DNA of 64,000 nt from contig NIVC01000387.1 of the NCBI GenBank assembly GCA_002269645.1, forward strand, positions 124,001-188,000, given 5' to 3'. This DNA is from Macrostomum lignano. Its lineage: Eukaryota. Shown piece by piece: positions 1 to 20,588 of this stretch. A model generated the notes under the pieces. That model made no database searches, was not told where the DNA came from, and worked only from the letters and a program-made list of their open reading frames with translations. Both the position numbers and the translations under genes were made by a program. Within the stretch, counting starts at the first letter, position 1, and the number at the start of each line of letters is the position of its first letter.

Positions 1-1
1 C

Positions 2-48
<47 letters not shown>

Positions 49-65
49 ATGTATGTATGTCTGCC

Positions 66-104
<39 letters not shown>

Positions 105-105
105 A

Positions 106-140
<35 letters not shown>

Positions 141-276
141 ATGTATGTCTGTATGTATGTATGTATGTCTGTCTGTATGTCTGTCTGTCTGTCTGTATGT
201 CTGTCTGTATGTCTGTCTGTCTGTCTGTCTGTCTGTATGTATGTATGTATGTCTGTCTGTCTGTCTGTCTGTCTGC
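1..276. repeat. (CTGT)n/(ATGT)n microsatellite in UBA5 intron
   Basis: Direct reading of the sequence. Confidence 0.97.
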
Positions 277-281
277 TGCAG

Positions 282-1115
282 CAGGATAGCGCCGACCCGC
301 TTCAACTCCGTCAGATCGAGGCGCACTCCTGCAACGTGACAACAATGGAAGGCTACGAGCTGCTCCGGTCTCGCGCAGCCGAAGGCGGCCTGCCCGACGG
401 CGGCCCCGTACAGACGCTGCTGGCCTGCGTTGACAACTACGAGGCCCGCGTGGCGGTCAGCGCCATGTGCACCGAGCTCGGCCTCACCTGGCTGGAGTCC
501 GGCGTCTCCGAGGACGCCGTCAGCGGCCACGTGCAGCTGATGCGGCCGGGCCGGACGCCCTGCTTTGCCTGCCTGCCGCCGCTTGTCGTGGCCGAAGGCG
601 GCGATGAGCGGACGCTGAAGCGGGAGGGCGTCTGCGCGGCGTCCCTGCCCACCACAATGGGCATCGTGGCCGGCCTGCTGGTCCAGGCCACCCTCAAGCT
701 GCTGCTGGGCTTCGGCCGGGTGTCTCCCTACCTGGGCTACTCGGCCATGACCGACTTCTTCCCGGTCGAGTCGCTCAAGCCCAATCCCGACTGCGCCGAG
801 CCCGCCTGCCAGCGCCGTCAGCGCGAGGCCGCCGAGGCCGACGCCGTTGCTGCCGCCGCCGCCACGCCTGACTCAGCGGAGCAGAACTCGTCGGCCGCTG
901 CGGCCGCAGTCCACTCGGAGAACGACTGGTGCATCGAGCTGGTTGAGGAGGGCGGTGACGAGGCGGCGGCCGGCCGCTCTGTTGGAGCCGGCGGCGGTGT
1001 CCGCACGGCCTACTCGGTGCCCGCCGCTGCCGCTGATGCCGCCGCCCCTGCCGCCGCAGTGCAGGAATCCGGCCTGAGTCTGGAGGATTTGCGCGCTCAA
1101 ATGGGCCGTCTTTGA
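282..1115 (+). CDS. UBA5: Last coding exon of ubiquitin-like modifier-activating enzyme 5 (UFM1 E1); 5' exons lie outside the window
   Basis: Translation contains [39 protein letters not shown], the catalytic [13 protein letters not shown], a UFM1/LC3-interacting-like NDWCIELV and a UFC1-binding-like C-terminus [12 protein letters not shown]. The acceptor is uncertain (AG ending at 281, 284 or 314) and follows a (CTGT)n tract. Confidence 0.93.
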
Positions 1116-2241
1116 CAGTTGCGAGCGCAGCTGTCTGTTTGCGAGAAAAAATTGTCCCTAAAGCAGCTGTCCGCCCGGATCGATTGAGATTTAAATTCGA
1201 TGGGTTTCCATTGCGTGTTGGCTCGTTATATCTGTTTGATTTAAGATGTTTTTGATGATTGTGATTGAAATTGAAATGCAGTTTTATGCGCTATTCTGTT
1301 GTTCATTCGCTTATCCAATCCACCGCCCCGTTGAAAACGTTACCGTTACGAAAATCGCTGGAGTCATTGCCAACACGCGAAAAATTTGTTCAATAGTCGG
1401 TGTGTTAGCGCTTAGCTTACTACTATCTTGAGTTCACTAATAAGAGTTTTTATAAATGCGAAATGCAATTCTGACTCAAGCAAGCAACGCCTGAGATACG
1501 ATTCTACGGCCCCGGAGTCATTCTAGAAGCGCCCCAGACTCACGCCTCAAATTAGCTCTTAGGCGACTCTTTTACGACTTTTTTGGCGTCCTTGGGGTAC
1601 CGTTTTTCATCGGAACGCTTGTCCGTTTATTTGTTGTGCCCGTCTTCCGCTATAAAGTGTTTCTGCTTGCTGCTTTCCTGTATTGGTGTGTGGGAGTCTC
1701 CGCTGCTTTGCATTGTTATATTCACCTCCCTTGCTATTATGGTCAATCTGGTCAGTGTTAATCCGTTTGCTATTTATCAGCTAATAATACATCATATTAC
1801 ACGCGCCGTCGCATTATATATTATTTTACCTAGCTGAGTATAACTCTGTCCCGCCCTGTCCGACATTCCCCATGCATTGGAATCCGCAGTCAGTGCTTAG
1901 CGACCTGCTTGACTAGTTCACTTTCTTTCAATTAGTTTCTGTTGCGCTTGCTCGCTGAAAAGATAAAAAAATAGTAAAACAGTGACGAATTTCTTTTGCT
2001 TCGGGATGATTTGGTTTTTTTGTTTCCTTACTTTTTTATTATGCATAAATGCCATAAATATCAAAGCGGTGCAGGGGGTTTGTGGTGTACAATATGTTTC
2101 CGAAAAGGTTGCACACTGATTGTTGAAATAGAGCTTCGAGCGTGTGCGTGTCACAGGTGACGACACAGGTAGAATCTCGCAAAGGGAATTTTAATATTAT
2201 TAACAATTTCCCATCTGCAGTCGCGCATCGAGTTCCCGCCA

Positions 2242-4843
2242 GTGGAAGAAATCCAACGGCAATGCCACGAGCTGGAGGCTCTGCTGGACGGCGAAGGCGA
2301 CGGCGACGAGTCCGGATCTGCGAAGCGGCGCGACCGGCCCTGCCCGCTGTGCGGCCGGCAGTTCCGCCTCTTGGCTAACCTGCGCCGGCACCTCCGCCTG
2401 CGGCACGCGCTGCTGCACCGGCAGGAGTCTCCCGAGCAGCCGCCCAGAAAGCGGAGCCGCCCGACCGGCCCAGCAAAGAAGCCGGGATGGGCCGGCGCCA
2501 GCGGCGAGTGGCGCAGCGCCGAGGTGGCCAGCCACGCCGAGCTGACAGCCTGGCGCCTCAGCCACGAGGCCAGCGTCGGCTGCCGGTACTATGTCAGCAG
2601 CCTGCGGCGGGAGGGCGGCGGCGGCGAGCCCGGCGCGGTTCGCTACTGCGTGCACAGCTGCAGCGCGGGCTGGCGGACCCGCCTGGCCTGCCCGGCCCGC
2701 ATCATCGCCTCCAGGCGGCCGGGCGGCCTGGCCGGCTACCGGATTCGCTACTCCCTGCTGCACCGCCACCACCCGGAGCACCGGCCGCCCGCCCGCACCC
2801 GCTTCAGCGCTGGCGAAGCCAGTCACGTGCCAGACGTGCGCGCCCGCGCGCTGCGCTCGGCGCTGCTGTCTACTGAGGAGCCCGACCGGCTGTGCGACCC
2901 CCGGCTGGCCCGGCGCCTGACGCGCGAGGCCCTACGCGGCCATGCCCTGGGCGGCCAGCAGCCGTGGCAGGCGGTCGAGGAGCGACTGCTGACCGAACTG
3001 GCGGCCGGGCCGGCCAGCCCGCTGCTGCTGTGCCAGTTCCGACGCTCCTGGTGCTTCAGAAACCGCGTCCGGCTTGGCGCCGGCTTTCACCCGTCTGACG
3101 GCGCGCTCGGCTGCGCGCTGACGCTGCAGGCGCCGTCAGAGCGGCAGCTGCTGGCGCAGCGTCTTTCCAGCGCCGAAGCTCTGGTCATCGACTGCGTCTA
3201 CGAGAGCTCCGACCCCGAGGAGCTCAGCGTGCTCTGCCTGCTGCTGCTGGATGCTGAGGGTGAGGCAGTCGGCAACTGTATGCAGTTTTGAATGAGAAAA
3301 ATAACCCTATCGACTTTATTGATTGCTGCTTGGCATTTCAGGGCGGCCACAGACAGGCGGCTGGCTGCTGACTGACCGAGTCACCGAGACTCGCGTTGAG
3401 GACTGGCTGCGCTGCTGCGTCACCGCGGCGGCCGATTCGCCTCGCTCCGACTCCGGCTGCGCCTTCACCGGCTGGCTGCTGCTGCCGCCCGGACTGCTGG
3501 GCGCCACTGCCGGGGCCCGCGTGTTCCCCAGGGCTGCCGGCTGCTTTGCCGAGCGGCTGCAGCTGCTGAGGAGCTGGCGGCGCTGCCTGCAGGTAAGCGT
3601 CTGCCATCTGATTGTCTCTTCAGTCCACTCCCCTGTTTTTAGACCTCCCCATTGTGTCAGTCGTCCCAATTGTGTCCTCCGTCCTCCGCATTGTGTCCCC
3701 ATTTTCCTCAGTCCACTCCACTGTCACTCAACCGCAGGCCCGCCCGGACCAGTGGGACGTCGCCGCCCTGCTGCTGCTGGAGCTCCACGCCGCGGCAGTG
3801 CAGCCGCAGCTCGGCCGGGCCTCCGCCGCCCTGTCAGAATTCGCCAGAAAATTCCGCCGCGTCTCGCCGGAGCTGGCGGCTCGCGCCGACCGCCTTGCCC
3901 GCTGGCCGCAGCTGTGGGCGGACGCGGCCAAGCCGGCCCGCCTTCGCTGGGTGGAGATGCGGCTGCACTCGAACCCGGGACTGCTCGGTCTGCTACCCCT
4001 GCACTTCGCCGGACGGACGCGCCGGCCCGACCGCCTGCTGGCGCTGGTGCTGGAGGCGGCTGACTGGCGCCGCAGCTGCTGCGAGCTGGACGACGACCTC
4101 GATAGCCACCGGGAGTCCCTGGCCGGCGACACCGCCACCGCCCCGGTGACGGCGGCTTTTCGGACAGACGCGCCGGCCATTCACAGCGGGCCCGCCTGGC
4201 CGGATTTGGCCGATCAGTTCTGTCCGAGGGAGATCCAGGTGAGCGGGTGTCCATGAATATGCGGGTGTCCATGAATATGCATTCTGAATTCAGCTCGCAA
4301 TGCTGTACATGCACTGCTGTCGCACTCTTGCAGGCGCAGCTGGCCGGGCAGCCCTGCCTCGTGGCCGGCAGCCAGCTGGTCCGCCGGGTTCGCTCCGTCT
4401 GTCCGGAGCGGCTCTGCTTCCGACTCTGCCCGTCCGCCGCCTGTGCCGGCCTGTGCCCGCACCTGTACCGCTGCGACTGCCGGCCGGCGGGCCAGACCGG
4501 CTTCTGCCGCCACGTGCACCGGGCGCACGCCGATCTGACAGCCCGCCTGCTGCACACGCCAGCTGCCGAGGCGGTGCGCAGAGCCACTGTGGCCGAACAG
4601 CCACTGCTGCTGCCGGCCAGGCCGTCCGACCAGCTGCTGGTTGAAGCGGAGCTCGGCCTGTCAGCGGAGCCGCATCAGCAGCCGCATCAGCTCGCCGCGG
4701 CTGCCAGTTCCGCGACAGTCCCAACGCATTCGGCGGAGCTGCAAGTCTGGCTGCCGGACGCACCGCTGCCGCCGCAACCGCTGATATCCTCGGACCTCAG
4801 CCCACGGGCTCAGCAGCTGATTAGCCTGCTACTGGATGATTGA
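2242..4843 (+). CDS. Mutator-like (MULE) transposase-derived protein: C2H2 finger + WRKY/GCM-like finger + degenerate MULE domain + SWIM finger; 4 exons; start codon not resolved
   Basis: Exons about 2221/2242-3259, 3342-3592, 3738-4238 and 4334-4843 join in frame through GT-AG introns (2280 nt from 2242). Motifs: CPLCGRQFRLLANLRRHLRLRH; YCVHSC..CPARI..LLHRHH; VIDCVY..LCLLLLDAEG|RPQTGGWLLT; GRTRRPDRLL; CAGLCPHLYRCDC..FCRHVH (SWIM). AATAAA at 4971. Confidence 0.8.
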
Positions 4844-6015
4844 CAGGCATTTATTTGCGTCTGCTGTCCGAATACCTTAATTACACTTGTGCATTTGCTG
4901 CTGCTGTTTATTGTTTATATTCGATCTTGTTCGGCATTCTGAATGCAACTTGAATTTCTCAAATAATTCAAATAAAGTCAAAAAAGATCGAAGACATCAA
5001 AGTGAATTCAATTGGCTTTACCGATCAGATAGAGAGGAGACCTGAAATTCTGGGGCTGCCTATCAGCAATGGCGGCGTGTCAAAACATGATTTATTATTT
5101 AACAATGCCTGATGAGATCGATCAATGGTTAGCGGCACAACAGCGGGGACAGCAACTGGAGTCGCTGGGCGGGCAAGTATAAAACACACACACACACTTA
5201 ACGCATCTCTCAAAAAGGAGAATTTTCAGTCATATTGTTGGAATAAACAAACAAACATACAAAACCGGCAGCGCCTAAACAATTGTAAAACGAACCGAAG
5301 CTAAGAAAGTAAAAAACGGGAATCACGCAATGCGGATTAATAATGAGGCTTTGTACAGGGACTATGACAGAATTGAGCCTGGGAATTCTTTCCTAATAGA
5401 AAAGATTATAAATATGCTACGAAAATTGAACTATTGAATCGGTGCCAAGTTGTGAAAGCAATTTTAACAAAAAGTATTACAACGCCCACAGTGGAATTGA
5501 GTTGCAGAAACTGAAGCAGCGGCAACAACAGAGACAAAGGTATAACAGAAGCCAGGCAGGAAAGCGAGATTAGGCGGGGCGGACAGGAGGATTAAGCCAT
5601 GACTTGCTGGGGCTGCCGTACTACTTAGGAAAAACAACTGGTCAAATTTTAGCACCAGGACGTTGCCTGCCGATAATTAATTTTAAAAAAGCTATTTTAT
5701 TGTTAGTTTTTACCTGAACGCGCAGTATAGCAGAAAAACTACATGTACAGCAGCGAGTGTACACAGCGGTTATTTCCATACAGTAACCAAACATACTACT
5801 AGTCTGTTAGTAGCGCAAGTTCTAGGATAAGATAAAACTGTTGTCTTGGTTTAGTGATATGCAACGACGTAAATATTTCTGTCATTTTAGCTAAGCTTGC
5901 AGACCTGACTGACTGACAGCTGAACCCTGACCGGCGCACCAATTTCATAATACGAAGAAATAAAAATCAAAAGTTAATCCGGCTCCAGTCCCAATTGCCA
6001 TGGCAACCGGGTCAG

Positions 6016-20588
<14,573 letters not shown>

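What the first reader, a model, noticed from the sequence alone, without database searches (positions are those of the whole stretch)
2221..4976. Apparently domesticated, catalytically dead Mutator transposase gene (C2H2 + WRKY/GCM-like finger + MULE + SWIM)
Seen: four exons join in frame without stops, with canonical introns, host-like GC-rich codons, a polyA signal at 4971 and no flanking TIRs or TSD that I could find. The domain order matches animal Mutator transposases (established: WRKY/GCM-type DNA-binding finger, DDE domain, SWIM). Only the first catalytic Asp (IDCVY) is recognisable. At the expected second Asp the sequence reads WLLLPP, the CxxH signature reads GCFAERL, and the Glu region reads EMRLHS, while the zinc ligands of all three fingers are kept. 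Inference: a host-recruited DNA-binding regulator analogous to plant FAR1/FHY3 and MUSTANG or vertebrate ZSWIM3, possibly lineage-specific and undescribed. It sits between UBA5 and the convergent 3' end of DOT1L.
Basis: partly seen in the sequence, partly recalled or inferred. Interest (0 to 1): 0.72.

Follow-up and report, generated by a model that had tools for sequence, protein, structure and literature searches.

The report
Domesticated, inactive Mutator transposase gene in flatworm
A four-exon gene of the flatworm Macrostomum lignano, lying between UBA5 and DOT1L, descends from a Mutator-type jumping-gene enzyme that has lost a key catalytic residue and its mobility but kept its zinc fingers, so it probably now binds DNA for the host.

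Summary
Exons 2221-3259, 3342-3592, 3738-4238 and 4334-4843 join in frame with GT..AG introns. Their translation equals the transcript-based GenBank protein PAA84119.1 (Macrostomum lignano Mlig033309.g4, "hypothetical protein, partial").

The protein has no direct Pfam MULE or SWIM hit. Its Cys/His-rich C-terminal module matches proteins that do carry MULE / ZSWIM1-3 RNaseH-like domains (profile E 1e-13 to 5e-21). The WRKY-like finger and the first half of the catalytic core give weaker, collinear similarity (0 of 2000 shuffles reach the score).

The first catalytic Asp (D324) and the conserved Trp (W486) remain. The second Asp is gone: there is no acidic residue between aa 384 and 416. The (C/D)xxH motif is broken, and the Glu is ambiguous (E503).

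There are no terminal inverted repeats. All four genomic copies sit in the same Radial-spoke / UBA5 / X / DOT1 synteny, so they are polyploid or haplotype copies. dN/dS among the intact copies is 0.14-0.25.

Exon 1 has no ATG. The acceptor at 2221 fits spliced-leader trans-splicing, and the leader's terminal AUG is in frame.

Verdict: a domesticated MULE-derived zinc-finger gene, a new member of a known kind. Its function has not been tested.

The parts
2215..2220 (+). Splice acceptor CTGCAG; proposed spliced-leader trans-splice site
   Evidence: It matches the M. lignano trans-acceptor motif [T/C]TNCAG (PMC8629364). The GenBank CDS of this copy starts exactly at 2221 and is flagged partial. 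An in-frame TAG lies at 2170-2172 with no ATG before 2221.
2221..3259 (+). Exon 1 (aa 1-346 plus 1 nt): C2H2 finger, basic NLS-like stretch, WRKY/FAR1-like finger, start of the RNase H-like core with D324
3342..3592 (+). Exon 2 (aa 347-430): rest of the core N-half, the degenerate D2 site and the degenerate CxxH site
3738..4238 (+). Exon 3 (aa 431-597): helical C-half of the core, with no detectable similarity left except W486 and the E503 region
4334..4843 (+). Exon 4 (aa 598-766 plus TGA): extended SWIM-like zinc module and C-terminal helix
2341..2406 (+). C2H2 zinc finger, aa 41-62 (CPLCGRQFRLLANLRRHLRLRH)
   Evidence: Pfam zf-C2H2 gives E 0.0015 and 19.3 bits, below the 25.2 cut-off. The pattern is C-x2-C-x12-H-x4-H. 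It aligns with the C2H2 finger of P0013, P0017 and P0042.
2443..2484 (+). Basic stretch PRKRSRPTGPAKKP (aa 75-88), a possible nuclear localisation signal
   Evidence: Read from the sequence. The role is inference only.
2515..2772 (+). WRKY-GCM1/FAR1-like zinc finger, aa 99-184; ligands C147, C157, H181, H183; shared CPARI motif
   Evidence: hhalign E 0.008. HMM hit at aa 152-164 with iE 0.016. 0 of 2000 shuffles reach the score. The ligand columns are invariant or nearly invariant. pLDDT is 56-80, and the top Foldseek hit is the AtWRKY18 DNA-binding domain at E 8e-3, TM 0.61.
3118..4121 (+). Degenerate RNase H-like (MULE) core, aa 300-558; the span includes introns 1 and 2
   Evidence: It is collinear with P0017 aa 319-581, but hhalign E is 0.4 for this region alone. 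The N-half (aa 301-365) gives iE 0.058 and 0 of 2000 shuffles reach its score. The C-half gives no signal. The predicted order is b1-b2-b3-a1-b4-a2. ISCth4 (IS256-family) and Hermes transposases are among the top Foldseek hits at E 0.013-0.06.
3190..3192 (+). D324, the retained first catalytic Asp (VIDCVY), on predicted strand b1
3482..3490 (+). L394-P395-P396 at the position of the second catalytic Asp (relatives read MTDED/N)
   Evidence: There is no Asp or Glu anywhere between aa 384 and 416.
3542..3562 (+). CFAERLQ (aa 414-420) at the (C/D)xxH position; the His is lost in either alignment register
   Evidence: anchored on the invariant W425.
3903..3905 (+). W486, the conserved Trp upstream of the catalytic Glu (counterpart of Muta1 W401)
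   Evidence: Nearly invariant column. Spacing data. Role of the Trp from PMC5499845.
3954..3959 (+). E503-M504, the ambiguous catalytic Glu position
   Evidence: E503 is +17 from W486, while relatives with a Glu have it at +19. The two MAFFT alignments disagree here.
4400..4528 (+). Extended SWIM-like module, aa 620-662: 8 Cys and 4 His invariant, including CxCx8CxH (C644, C646, C655, H657)
   Evidence: phmmer hits at 1e-10 to 1e-3 to the same module of MULE proteins. hhalign Prob 98%, E 1e-13. hmmsearch 5e-21. Invariant columns. UniRef names the C-terminal fragment P0041 'SWIM-type domain-containing protein'. Pfam SWIM does not hit.
4799..4840 (+). C-terminal helix SPRAQQLISLLLDD, aligned with a conserved L-x-x-R-L-Q-x-L-x-x-LL motif of the relatives
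   Evidence: Predicted helix at aa 754-764.
4971..4976 (+). AATAAA poly(A) signal, 128 nt after the stop codon

Best explanation
This is a host gene of Macrostomum lignano, Mlig033309.g4 (PAA84119.1), with three near-identical polyploid or haplotype copies. It descends from a Mutator-superfamily (MULE) transposase of an animal clade. That clade's architecture is C2H2 finger, WRKY/FAR1-like finger, RNase H-like DDE core, and an extended SWIM-like zinc module.

Shown:
- The gene is immobile: no TIRs, one syntenic locus.
- It is interrupted by three spliceosomal introns and uses host codons.
- The public annotation built from transcripts contains it.
- It has evolved under purifying selection since the copies diverged.
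- It keeps all zinc ligands of its three finger modules.
- It lacks the second catalytic Asp and the His of the (C/D)xxH motif, and the C-terminal half of its core has drifted beyond recognition.

Inferred:
- It cannot cut or join DNA. In the MULE Muta1, changing the second Asp alone to Ala abolishes cleavage and end joining.
- It acts as a nuclear, sequence-specific DNA-binding protein, either a regulator or a chromatin adaptor. The C2H2 and WRKY-like fingers would read DNA, and the SWIM-like module plus the dead core would serve as an oligomerisation or partner-binding scaffold, as in plant FHY3/FAR1.
- Its mRNA is made by spliced-leader trans-splicing at 2221. The AUG at the 3' end of the leader supplies the initiator Met in frame (M-SRIEFPP...), possibly from a UBA5-X polycistronic precursor.
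For: Gene model. The exons join in frame, and the translation is identical to the transcript-derived PAA84119.1.

Homology. An exhaustive phmmer search of 1.84 billion representatives returns two kinds of hit: C2H2 repeats, and the aa 609-686 module. Of ten module-class hits scanned, five (P0007, P0013, P0017, P0019, P0021) carry PF10551 MULE, at or within 0.1 bit of its cut-off, four of them also PF21056, and several have N-terminal C2H2 fingers. hhalign gives 98% probability at E 1e-13. An HMM built from nine relatives gives three collinear hits at aa 152-164, 301-365 and 610-673. For both the WRKY region and the core N-half, 0 of 2000 shuffles reach the observed score. AF2 predicts b1-b2-b3-a1-b4-a2 with D324 on b1. 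The best Foldseek hits are the WRKY18 DNA-binding domain and the IS256-family ISCth4 transposase.

Catalytic residues. The requirement for the DDE triad and the Trp in Muta1 is from PMC5499845.

Immobility. No TIRs. Single copy in the window. All four genome copies lie in Radial_spoke / ThiF / X / DOT1 synteny. The GenBank gene set excluded transcripts that overlap repeats (PMC5730564).

Selection. Synonymous to nonsynonymous changes are 13:5, 9:6 and 14:9, where about 1:2.65 is expected under neutrality. dN/dS is 0.14-0.25, with one-sided p of 1e-4, 0.008 and 8e-4. dS (0.014-0.023) is about equal to the noncoding divergence (0.017-0.018).

Start codon. There is no in-frame ATG in exon 1 and a TAG at 2170. 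The leader ends in ...GCATG and the acceptor motif fits. The leader's ATG has been noted as a likely start codon in Macrostomum. The annotation pipeline cuts genes at leader sites after trimming the leader, and the annotated CDS starts exactly at 2221.
Against: - No Pfam MULE, SWIM or FAR1 hit on the protein itself.
- The core region alone is not significant by hhalign (E 0.4), and its C-half has no detectable similarity. The mapping of D2, CxxH and E therefore rests on weak local alignment plus predicted secondary structure.
- The structure model is poor (mean pLDDT 41.6), and no Foldseek match reaches E 1e-3.
- No orthologue outside M. lignano could be found or searched for. Age and cross-species constraint are unknown, and the dN/dS values rest on only 15-23 substitutions in non-independent comparisons.
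- One copy (L004) carries three 1-bp indels in exon 1.
- No RNA-seq reads were inspected, so trans-splicing at 2221 and the leader-derived AUG are inferred.
- DNA binding and any regulatory role are untested.
Confidence: 0.78

Rival explanations
1. It is the C-terminal extension of an alternative UBA5 isoform, not a separate gene. A donor inside the last UBA5 exon (GCA|GTGCAG at 1058/1059) would be cis-spliced to the acceptor at 2221, giving a UBA5-transposase fusion protein.
For: The UniRef model A0A1I8GZ54 (P0002, 871 aa) joins ...DAAAPAAA directly to SRIEFPP in frame. Exon 1 has no ATG of its own. There is no canonical AATAAA or ATTAAA between the UBA5 stop and 2221.
Against: - The donor GTGCAG is weak.
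- P0002 comes from an older assembly and has garbled stretches inside UBA5 itself.
- The later transcript- and leader-guided annotation calls two genes in all four copies. UBA5 is 414 aa ending at its own stop, and X starts at or within 9 nt of the acceptor.
- The leader's AUG gives a simpler in-frame start.
- Occasional cis-splicing from an upstream gene to a trans-acceptor would be expected as a by-product of a polycistronic precursor.
Confidence: 0.1
2. It is a decaying relic of a transposon insertion, a pseudogene whose reading frame has survived by chance and has no host function.
For: - The catalytic core is degenerate.
- There is no detectable orthologue in any protein database.
- One copy has frameshifting indels.
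- The amino-acid composition is extreme and driven by GC content.
Against: - A 766-codon frame runs across four exons and is intact in three copies, with all splice sites canonical.
- There is a deficit of nonsynonymous changes, while dS matches the noncoding divergence.
- All 18 zinc ligands of the three finger modules are kept.
- The gene is present in a transcript-derived gene set.
Confidence: 0.07
3. It is one branch of a single ancient bilaterian domestication, orthologous to the echinoderm and shrimp relatives, rather than a flatworm-lineage recruitment.
For: - The whole architecture is shared, including the C-terminal L-x-x-R-L-Q-x-L-x-x-LL helix.
- The echinoderm clade (P0017, P0042, P0044, P0045, about 70% identical to one another) uniformly lacks the catalytic Glu.
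- The Penaeus clade (P0013, P0037, P0043) uniformly lacks the first Asp. These relatives therefore also look like host genes.
Against: - Different catalytic residues are lost in each lineage.
- The Amphiura gene encodes the whole transposase-like part in one exon, whereas the flatworm gene has three introns there, so no intron positions are shared.
- Identity is only 16-22%.
- Relatives with an intact DDE triad and an Ulp1 protease ORF, which look like elements, exist in the same family.
- Synteny could not be compared.
Confidence: 0.15
4. It still has nuclease or recombinase activity, built from a rearranged active site using D324, E503 and another acidic residue.
For: D324, W486 and possibly E503 are retained.
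Against: No acidic residue lies within 11 residues of the D2 position after strand b4. The His of CxxH is lost. The single substitution D283A abolishes Muta1 activity.
Confidence: 0.04

Closest known systems
Plant FHY3/FAR1/FRS and MUSTANG (MULE-derived transcription factors)
   Same: Both are immobile single-locus genes derived from a Mutator transposase. Both have an N-terminal WRKY-GCM1/FAR1-type finger, then a MULE core, then a C-terminal SWIM. Both are under purifying selection and are presumed to bind DNA without transposing.
   Different: - This gene is an animal (flatworm) gene from a different MULE clade.
- It has an extra N-terminal C2H2 finger.
- Its SWIM sits inside a 12-ligand Cys/His module.
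- Pfam FAR1, MULE and SWIM models do not recognise it.
- Its function has not been tested.
Vertebrate ZSWIM1/ZSWIM3 (Pfam PF21056 ZSWIM1-3 RNaseH-like)
   Same: These are animal proteins with a MULE-like RNase H-like domain followed by a SWIM finger. PF21056 is the best Pfam hit of several relatives of the candidate.
   Different: The candidate itself does not hit PF21056. No ZSWIM3 N-terminal or ZSWIM1/3 C-terminal domains were detected in the candidate or its relatives. Orthology is not indicated.
Animal MULE clades with zinc fingers (Spectre with C2H2; Phantom and Ghost with SWIM or FLYWCH; Curupira in flatworms; Muta1 of Aedes)
   Same: All belong to the same superfamily. C2H2, WRKY/FLYWCH-type and SWIM fingers are combined with a DDE core (PMC6446971; PMC5499845). 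Some relatives of the candidate carry an Ulp1 protease, as some MULEs do.
   Different: Those are mobile or recently mobile elements with TIRs, TSDs and an intact DDE triad. The candidate has none of these. I could not assign it to a named clade, because no reference sequences were at hand.
Uncharacterised relatives: Amphiura filiformis protein P0042 and Penaeus chinensis LOC125045492 (P0013)
   Same: They are collinear over the full length (C2H2, CPARI finger, core, 12-ligand module, C-terminal helix). Each lacks one catalytic residue and looks like a host gene.
   Different: - Identity is 16-22%.
- Different catalytic residues are lost.
- Exon structure differs.
- Their second Asp is intact.

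Membership tests
Mutator-superfamily (MULE) transposase, by descent | Match to Pfam MULE PF10551 (or PF21056) above the curated cut-off | tested here: not met
   No hit at E<=10 with the whole protein or with the core fragment.
Mutator-superfamily (MULE) transposase, by descent | Significant, collinear sequence similarity to proteins that do carry PF10551/PF21056 | tested here: met
   C-terminal module E 1e-13 to 5e-21. The finger and the core N-half are collinear, and 0 of 2000 shuffles reach their scores. The core C-half is undetectable.
Mutator-superfamily (MULE) transposase, by descent | RNase H-like fold with D on b1 and D after b4 | tested here: inconclusive
   The secondary-structure order fits, and Foldseek finds IS256-family, hAT and mariner transposases. 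However, pLDDT is about 40 and E is 0.013 or weaker.
Active DDE transposase of the MULE type | First catalytic Asp | tested here: met
   D324 in VIDCVY aligns with DxTH of the relatives.
Active DDE transposase of the MULE type | Second catalytic Asp | tested here: not met
   LPP stands where relatives have TDE. There is no D or E between aa 384 and 416.
Active DDE transposase of the MULE type | (C/D)xxH motif 15-45 aa after the second Asp | tested here: not met
   The region reads CFAERLQ. The His is replaced in either register, anchoring on W425. The motif definition is from PMC5499845.
Active DDE transposase of the MULE type | Catalytic Glu, with a conserved Trp about 18 aa upstream | tested here: inconclusive
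   W486 is present. E503 lies at +17, against +19 in relatives that have a Glu. The alignments disagree.
Mobile MULE element | Terminal inverted repeats and 8-10-bp target-site duplications | tested here: not met
   No flanking inverted repeats in 1100-6100.
Mobile MULE element | Multiple dispersed copies at unrelated loci | tested here: not met
   The four copies in assembly GCA_002269645.1 all lie in the same Radial_spoke / ThiF / X / DOT1 context. There are no other M. lignano paralogues among the 35 hits of the exhaustive search.
SWIM zinc finger | CxCxnCxH signature | tested here: met
   C644-x-C646-x8-C655-x-H657, all invariant across the family. UniRef names the fragment 'SWIM-type domain-containing'.
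SWIM zinc finger | Match to Pfam SWIM PF04434 | tested here: not met
   No hit at E<=10 for the candidate or for the same module of three relatives.
C2H2 zinc finger | C-x2-4-C-x12-H-x3-5-H with a Pfam zf-C2H2 match | tested here: inconclusive
   The pattern is perfect at aa 41-62. Pfam gives 19.3 bits against a cut-off of 25.2, E 0.0015. PDB C2H2 fingers match at E about 0.01.
WRKY-GCM1 / FAR1-type finger | Four-stranded sheet with C..C..HxH zinc ligands, N-terminal to the MULE core | tested here: met
   C147, C157, H181 and H183 fall in invariant or nearly invariant columns. Strands are predicted at pLDDT 56-80. AtWRKY18 DBD is the top Foldseek hit with TM 0.61, though only at E 8e-3. Pfam FAR1 gives just 0.11 on a relative and nothing on the candidate. 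A basic loop of about 24 residues between the two Cys is deleted in the candidate.
Domesticated (exapted) transposase gene | Purifying selection on the coding sequence | tested here: met
   dN/dS is 0.14-0.25 among the three intact copies, with p of 1e-4 to 8e-3, and dS is close to the noncoding divergence. There are few substitutions, and the comparison is within one genome only.
Domesticated (exapted) transposase gene | Syntenic orthologues in other species | not testable with these tools
   No eukaryotic genome collection was searchable. The protein searches returned only M. lignano sequences at high identity.
Domesticated (exapted) transposase gene | Expression as a spliced host mRNA | tested here: inconclusive
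   The GenBank model derives from a transcriptome-guided annotation and equals my exon model. I did not see reads.
Spliced-leader trans-spliced gene with a leader-donated AUG | Leader-containing reads ending at the acceptor; leader AUG in frame | tested here: inconclusive
   The acceptor motif, the in-frame phase, the lack of any ATG and the annotated 5' end at 2221 all fit. Reads were not available.

The most novel reading that the evidence does not exclude
The flatworm gene, the echinoderm clade and the penaeid shrimp clade may be members of an undescribed, recurrently or anciently domesticated animal MULE lineage. The lineage would be defined by C2H2, a WRKY-like finger, an RNase H-like core, a 12-ligand three-zinc SWIM-like module and a C-terminal helix. 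Each host lineage would have disabled a different catalytic residue while conserving the zinc modules. That pattern implies a common, selectable non-catalytic function, such as DNA targeting of a conserved partner, that predisposes this transposase to host capture.
Probability: 0.25. Interest if true: 0.65.

Novelty: new member of a known kind. Interest (0 to 1): 0.45.

Why it matters
MULE-derived host genes are well studied in plants (FHY3/FAR1, MUSTANG) but few are described in animals. This would be a clear flatworm example in a transgenic and RNAi-tractable model, so its function can be tested directly.

It also shows how far a domesticated transposase can drift. No Pfam domain is detected, and the amino-acid composition is extreme and GC-driven. 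Even so, every zinc ligand is kept.

It points to an unrecognised, strongly conserved 12-ligand extension of the SWIM finger. Finally, it gives a concrete case where the protein's only possible initiator is the AUG carried by the spliced leader, which explains why the public annotation calls the CDS 'partial'.

Tried and rejected
- Pfam on the whole protein and on three fragments returned only a sub-threshold C2H2 hit. The C-terminal modules of three relatives also gave no Pfam SWIM hit.
- PDB sequence searches, with the single protein and with a profile of the relatives, found no solved relative.
- The word-indexed homologue search found only M. lignano sequences, both with the protein and with alignment A1. 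With the relatives alone it found only five family members.
- Single-sequence AF2 was useless, with pLDDT 37. The MSA-based model was only slightly better at 41.6.
- hhalign on the core region alone was not significant.
- No copy of the leader sequence occurs in the window.
- No paper mentions the gene identifiers, and no paper links ZSWIM1/3 to MULE domestication with my search terms.
- An active transposon was considered and rejected, because there are no TIRs, the second Asp is lost and the locus is syntenic and single.
- A TE-copy explanation for the four near-identical proteins was rejected on the synteny evidence.
- TIRs were sought around the intact-DDE relative P0019 on contig L006 and none was found. 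Whether that relative is a mobile element stays open.

Full report
**1. What is in the sequence**

The window is Macrostomum lignano DNA. Positions 1116-6000 are 100% identical to GenBank contig NIVC01000387.1 of assembly GCA_002269645.1.

They join in frame into 766 codons plus TGA, and every intron is GT..AG. The translation is identical, residue for residue, to PAA84119.1 (P0040, 'hypothetical protein BOX15_Mlig033309g4, partial'). That annotation was built from a genome-guided transcriptome (PMC5730564).

Exon GC is 0.71-0.74, against 0.40-0.53 in introns and flanks. GC3 is 0.86, like the UBA5 exon (0.84) and the DOT1L-side ORFs (0.73-0.86). AATAAA at 4971 is the first canonical poly(A) hexamer after the stop.

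The neighbours are a ThiF/UBA5 gene upstream on the same strand and a convergent DOT1 gene whose CDS ends at 6016. No flanking inverted repeats exist, and there is no second copy in the window.

**2. The missing start codon**

The only Met in the protein is M504. The reading frame is closed by TAG at 2170-2172, with no ATG before 2221. So 2221 is an acceptor that must receive an upstream exon.

The M. lignano spliced leader is CGGTCTCTTACTGCGAAGACTCAATTTATTGCATG, and trans-acceptors carry [T/C]TNCAG (PMC8629364). Here the acceptor reads CTGCAG|TCG. The leader's terminal ATG abuts codon 1 in phase, giving M-SRIEFPP.... The leader's final ATG has been noted as a probable start codon in Macrostomum (PMC10468722).

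The annotation pipeline cut genes at leader sites after trimming the leader. That explains why the CDS is called 'partial' and begins exactly at 2221 in this copy, and 6 and 9 nt further in for two others.

An older UniRef model (A0A1I8GZ54, P0002) instead joins UBA5 codon ...AAA to SRIEF, through a weak donor GCA|GTGCAG at 1058/1059. I treat this as a minor or artefactual cis-splice of a possible polycistronic precursor.

The UBA5 stop and the acceptor are 1105 nt apart, and no canonical poly(A) hexamer lies between them. No reads were seen, so the trans-splicing explanation is inferred.

**3. What the protein is**

Pfam gives only a sub-threshold C2H2 hit at aa 41-62. It gives no MULE, SWIM or FAR1 hit, whether for the whole protein or in fragments. 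PDB sequences give only C2H2 fingers.

The exhaustive HMMER search of 1.84 billion representatives returned 35 hits, one of them the gene's own near-identical copy P0001. The rest are of two kinds: C2H2 arrays, and matches to aa 609-686.

Ten of the module-class hits were scanned with Pfam. Five (P0007, P0013, P0017, P0019, P0021) carry PF10551 MULE, at or within 0.1 bit of its cut-off, and four of these also carry PF21056 ZSWIM1-3 RNaseH-like; several have N-terminal C2H2 fingers. P0010 carries an Ulp1 protease instead of a detectable MULE core. The other four had no Pfam family hit, apart from one far-sub-threshold rve_3 match. Named members are Penaeus chinensis LOC125045492 and an Amphiura filiformis protein.

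Alignments A1 and A3 are collinear over the whole length:
- C2H2 finger;
- F..W...C...CPAR...Y..HxH, the WRKY/FAR1-like finger, with the candidate's C147, C157, H181 and H183 in conserved columns;
- NP.LL, then LQT.EQ;
- the D1 strand;
- the ..D after strand b2;
- the D2 strand, then VFP, then the CxxH site and ..W;
- W upstream of E;
- a module with 8 invariant Cys and 4 invariant His (C620...H662), which contains CxCx8CxH;
- a C-terminal L..RLQ.L..LL helix.

The statistics are as follows:
- The C-terminal module gives hhalign 98% probability at E 1e-13 and hmmsearch 5e-21.
- The finger gives hhalign E 0.008 and HMM iE 0.016.
- The D1 region (aa 301-365) gives iE 0.058. All three HMM hits are in collinear order.
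- In shuffle controls, 0 of 2000 shuffles reach the real score for aa 90-200 or for aa 280-400. For aa 280-560 the figure is 2 of 2000. Nothing is detectable in aa 400-560.

AF2 with alignment A3 is poor (mean pLDDT 41.6). It still predicts a sheet-rich finger at pLDDT 56-80, and the order b1(320-327)-b2-b3-a1-b4(391-393)-a2.

Foldseek against the PDB puts the AtWRKY18 DNA-binding domain first (E 8e-3, TM 0.61). The IS256-family ISCth4 transposase comes next (E 0.013), followed by Hermes and Mos1. None of these is significant by itself, and the model depends on the alignment. They are, however, exactly the folds expected of a MULE derivative.

**4. Catalytic residues**

In Muta1, the substitutions D214A, D283A, E419A and W401A each abolish cleavage and end joining. 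MULEs and hATs share a (C/D)xxH motif 15-45 aa after the second Asp, and a Trp upstream of the Glu (PMC5499845).

In the candidate:
- D324 (VIDCVY, on b1) is kept.
- At the second Asp, relatives read (M/V)(T/S)D(E/D) and the candidate reads L-L-P-P. No acidic residue occurs anywhere between aa 384 and 416, so the loss does not depend on alignment register.
- The CxxH site reads CFAERLQ. Anchoring on the invariant W425 puts E417 and Q420 at the C and H positions. The His is lost either way.
- W486 is kept.
- E503 lies +17 from W486, against +19 in relatives that have a Glu, so its homology is unresolved.

The claim of catalytic death therefore rests on the second Asp and the CxxH motif.

**5. 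Mobile element or host gene**

The 90% identity cluster holds four M. lignano proteins on four contigs. All four loci have the same gene order: Radial_spoke(-), ThiF/UBA5(+), X(+), DOT1(-). They are 98-99% identical through exons, introns and intergenic DNA, and differ by intron indels.

This is what the known redundancy of the DV1 assembly predicts: extra large chromosomes and 180 Mb of duplicated blocks at 95% identity or more (PMC5730564). It is not what transposition would give.

The three intact copies differ by 13:5, 9:6 and 14:9 synonymous to nonsynonymous changes, with S=630 and N=1669 sites. That gives dN/dS of 0.14-0.25 and one-sided binomial p of 1e-4, 0.008 and 8e-4. dS (0.014-0.023) equals the noncoding divergence (0.017-0.018).

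The fourth copy (L004) matches L001 in substitution counts region by region, apart from one extra mismatch in exon 1, and has three 1-bp indels in exon 1. This is either long-read assembly error or a dead allele. Its annotated product is the 264-aa ORF starting at M504.

The GenBank gene set excluded transcripts that overlap annotated repeats.

**6. Mechanism proposed**

Shown: descent from a MULE transposase, immobility, purifying constraint, retention of every zinc ligand, and loss of the second Asp and of CxxH.

Inferred: the product is a nuclear protein, given the basic PRKRSRPTGPAKKP stretch at aa 75-88. It would bind DNA through the C2H2 and WRKY-like fingers without cutting. The dead core plus the 12-ligand SWIM-like module would serve as an oligomerisation or partner-binding scaffold, by analogy with FHY3/FAR1.

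Compared with its relatives, the candidate's finger has lost a basic loop of about 24 residues between the two Cys ligands. Its DNA-binding mode may therefore differ.

**7. Relatives and novelty**

The echinoderm clade (P0017, P0042, P0044, P0045, about 70% identical to one another) uniformly has Asn or Thr at the Glu position and SxxH in place of CxxH. The Penaeus clade (P0013, P0037, P0043) uniformly has Val at the first Asp. P0019, which is followed by an Ulp1 ORF on its contig, has D, D, CxxH and E intact.

The Amphiura gene spans 9.3 kb. It encodes aa 258-1019, the whole transposase-like part, in one exon behind three added 5' exons. It therefore shares no intron with the flatworm gene.

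This pattern favours independent recruitments from one MULE lineage, but a single ancient event is not excluded.

No paper mentions the gene. MULE surveys list flatworm Curupira and Phantom elements and C2H2-bearing Spectre elements (PMC6446971). I could not place the candidate in a named clade.

I rate it a new member of a known kind, namely domesticated MULE transposases. It has two modest extras: the start codon donated by the spliced leader, and the conserved 12-ligand SWIM extension that Pfam does not model.

**8. Limits**

No eukaryotic genome collection or RNA-seq data could be queried. Orthology, age, expression and the 5' end therefore rest on annotation and inference.

The alignment in the C-half of the core is weak. 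The structure model is of low confidence. The selection test uses few, non-independent substitutions within one genome.

Noticed in passing
window 1-275: A (CTGT)n microsatellite of about 69 units, with CTGT/ATGT variants, runs up to the acceptor of the last UBA5 exon. It creates long spurious ORFs in three frames.
   Followed up: no
window 1116-2220: There is no canonical AATAAA or ATTAAA hexamer anywhere between the UBA5 stop codon and the acceptor at 2221. This is compatible with a UBA5-X polycistronic precursor or with a variant poly(A) signal.
   Followed up: partly
window 1058-1060 joined to 2221 (UniRef A0A1I8GZ54 = P0002): A public protein model fuses UBA5 in frame to this gene through a weak internal donor. 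The same model has garbled residues inside UBA5, which suggests it came from an error-prone older assembly.
   Followed up: partly
window 4243-4280 (intron 3): A perfect 18-bp tandem duplication, GCGGGTGTCCATGAATAT x2.1, starts 5 nt into intron 3, immediately after the donor GTGA. In copy L003 the same intron is about 440 bp longer.
   Followed up: no
window 3593-3737 (intron 2) versus L001 11472-11735 and L004: Copies L001 and L004 carry an insertion of about 263 bp in intron 2 relative to the window. L003 carries smaller insertions in introns 1 and 2. The nature of the inserts was not examined.
   Followed up: no
L004 5742-6803 (contig NIVC01001698.1, exon 1 equivalent): The fourth copy of the gene has three single-base indels in exon 1 that break the frame. 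Otherwise it matches L001 in substitution counts in every region compared, apart from one extra mismatch in exon 1. Its annotated product is only the 264-aa ORF from M504. This could be a dead allele or a long-read assembly error.
   Followed up: partly
window 6392-6704 and 7566-8343: There are two minisatellites inside the DOT1L gene region: 34 bp x 9.2 and 26 bp x 30.6. Both vary in copy number between the homologous contigs.
   Followed up: no
relatives P0017/P0042/P0044/P0045 and P0013/P0037/P0043: An echinoderm clade (Amphiura filiformis and relatives, about 70% identical) lacks the catalytic Glu. A penaeid shrimp clade lacks the first Asp. Both keep all zinc ligands, so they also look like domesticated genes rather than elements.
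   Followed up: partly
candidate aa 620-662 (window 4400-4528) and the same module in all relatives: Twelve invariant Cys/His residues form C-x4-C-x3-C-x4-C-x3-C-x-H...C-x-C-x8-C-x-H-x-H-x2-H, enough for three zinc ions. The module is strongly conserved across phyla, yet Pfam SWIM or any other Pfam model does not recognise it.
   Followed up: partly
whole protein (window 2221-4843): The amino-acid composition is extreme: L+A+R = 40%, against K 0.8%, N 0.4%, I 1.3%, Y 0.9% and a single Met. It mirrors GC3 of 0.86. This probably explains why domain models fail and why the word-indexed search was swamped.
   Followed up: no
L006 2470-6271 (JGI metagenome contig Ga0501171_005618): This family member has D, D, CxxH and E intact and is followed by an Ulp1 (Peptidase_C48) ORF. 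Its finger and core lie in separate ORFs, as if split by an intron. No TIRs were found on the 7.7-kb contig.
   Followed up: partly
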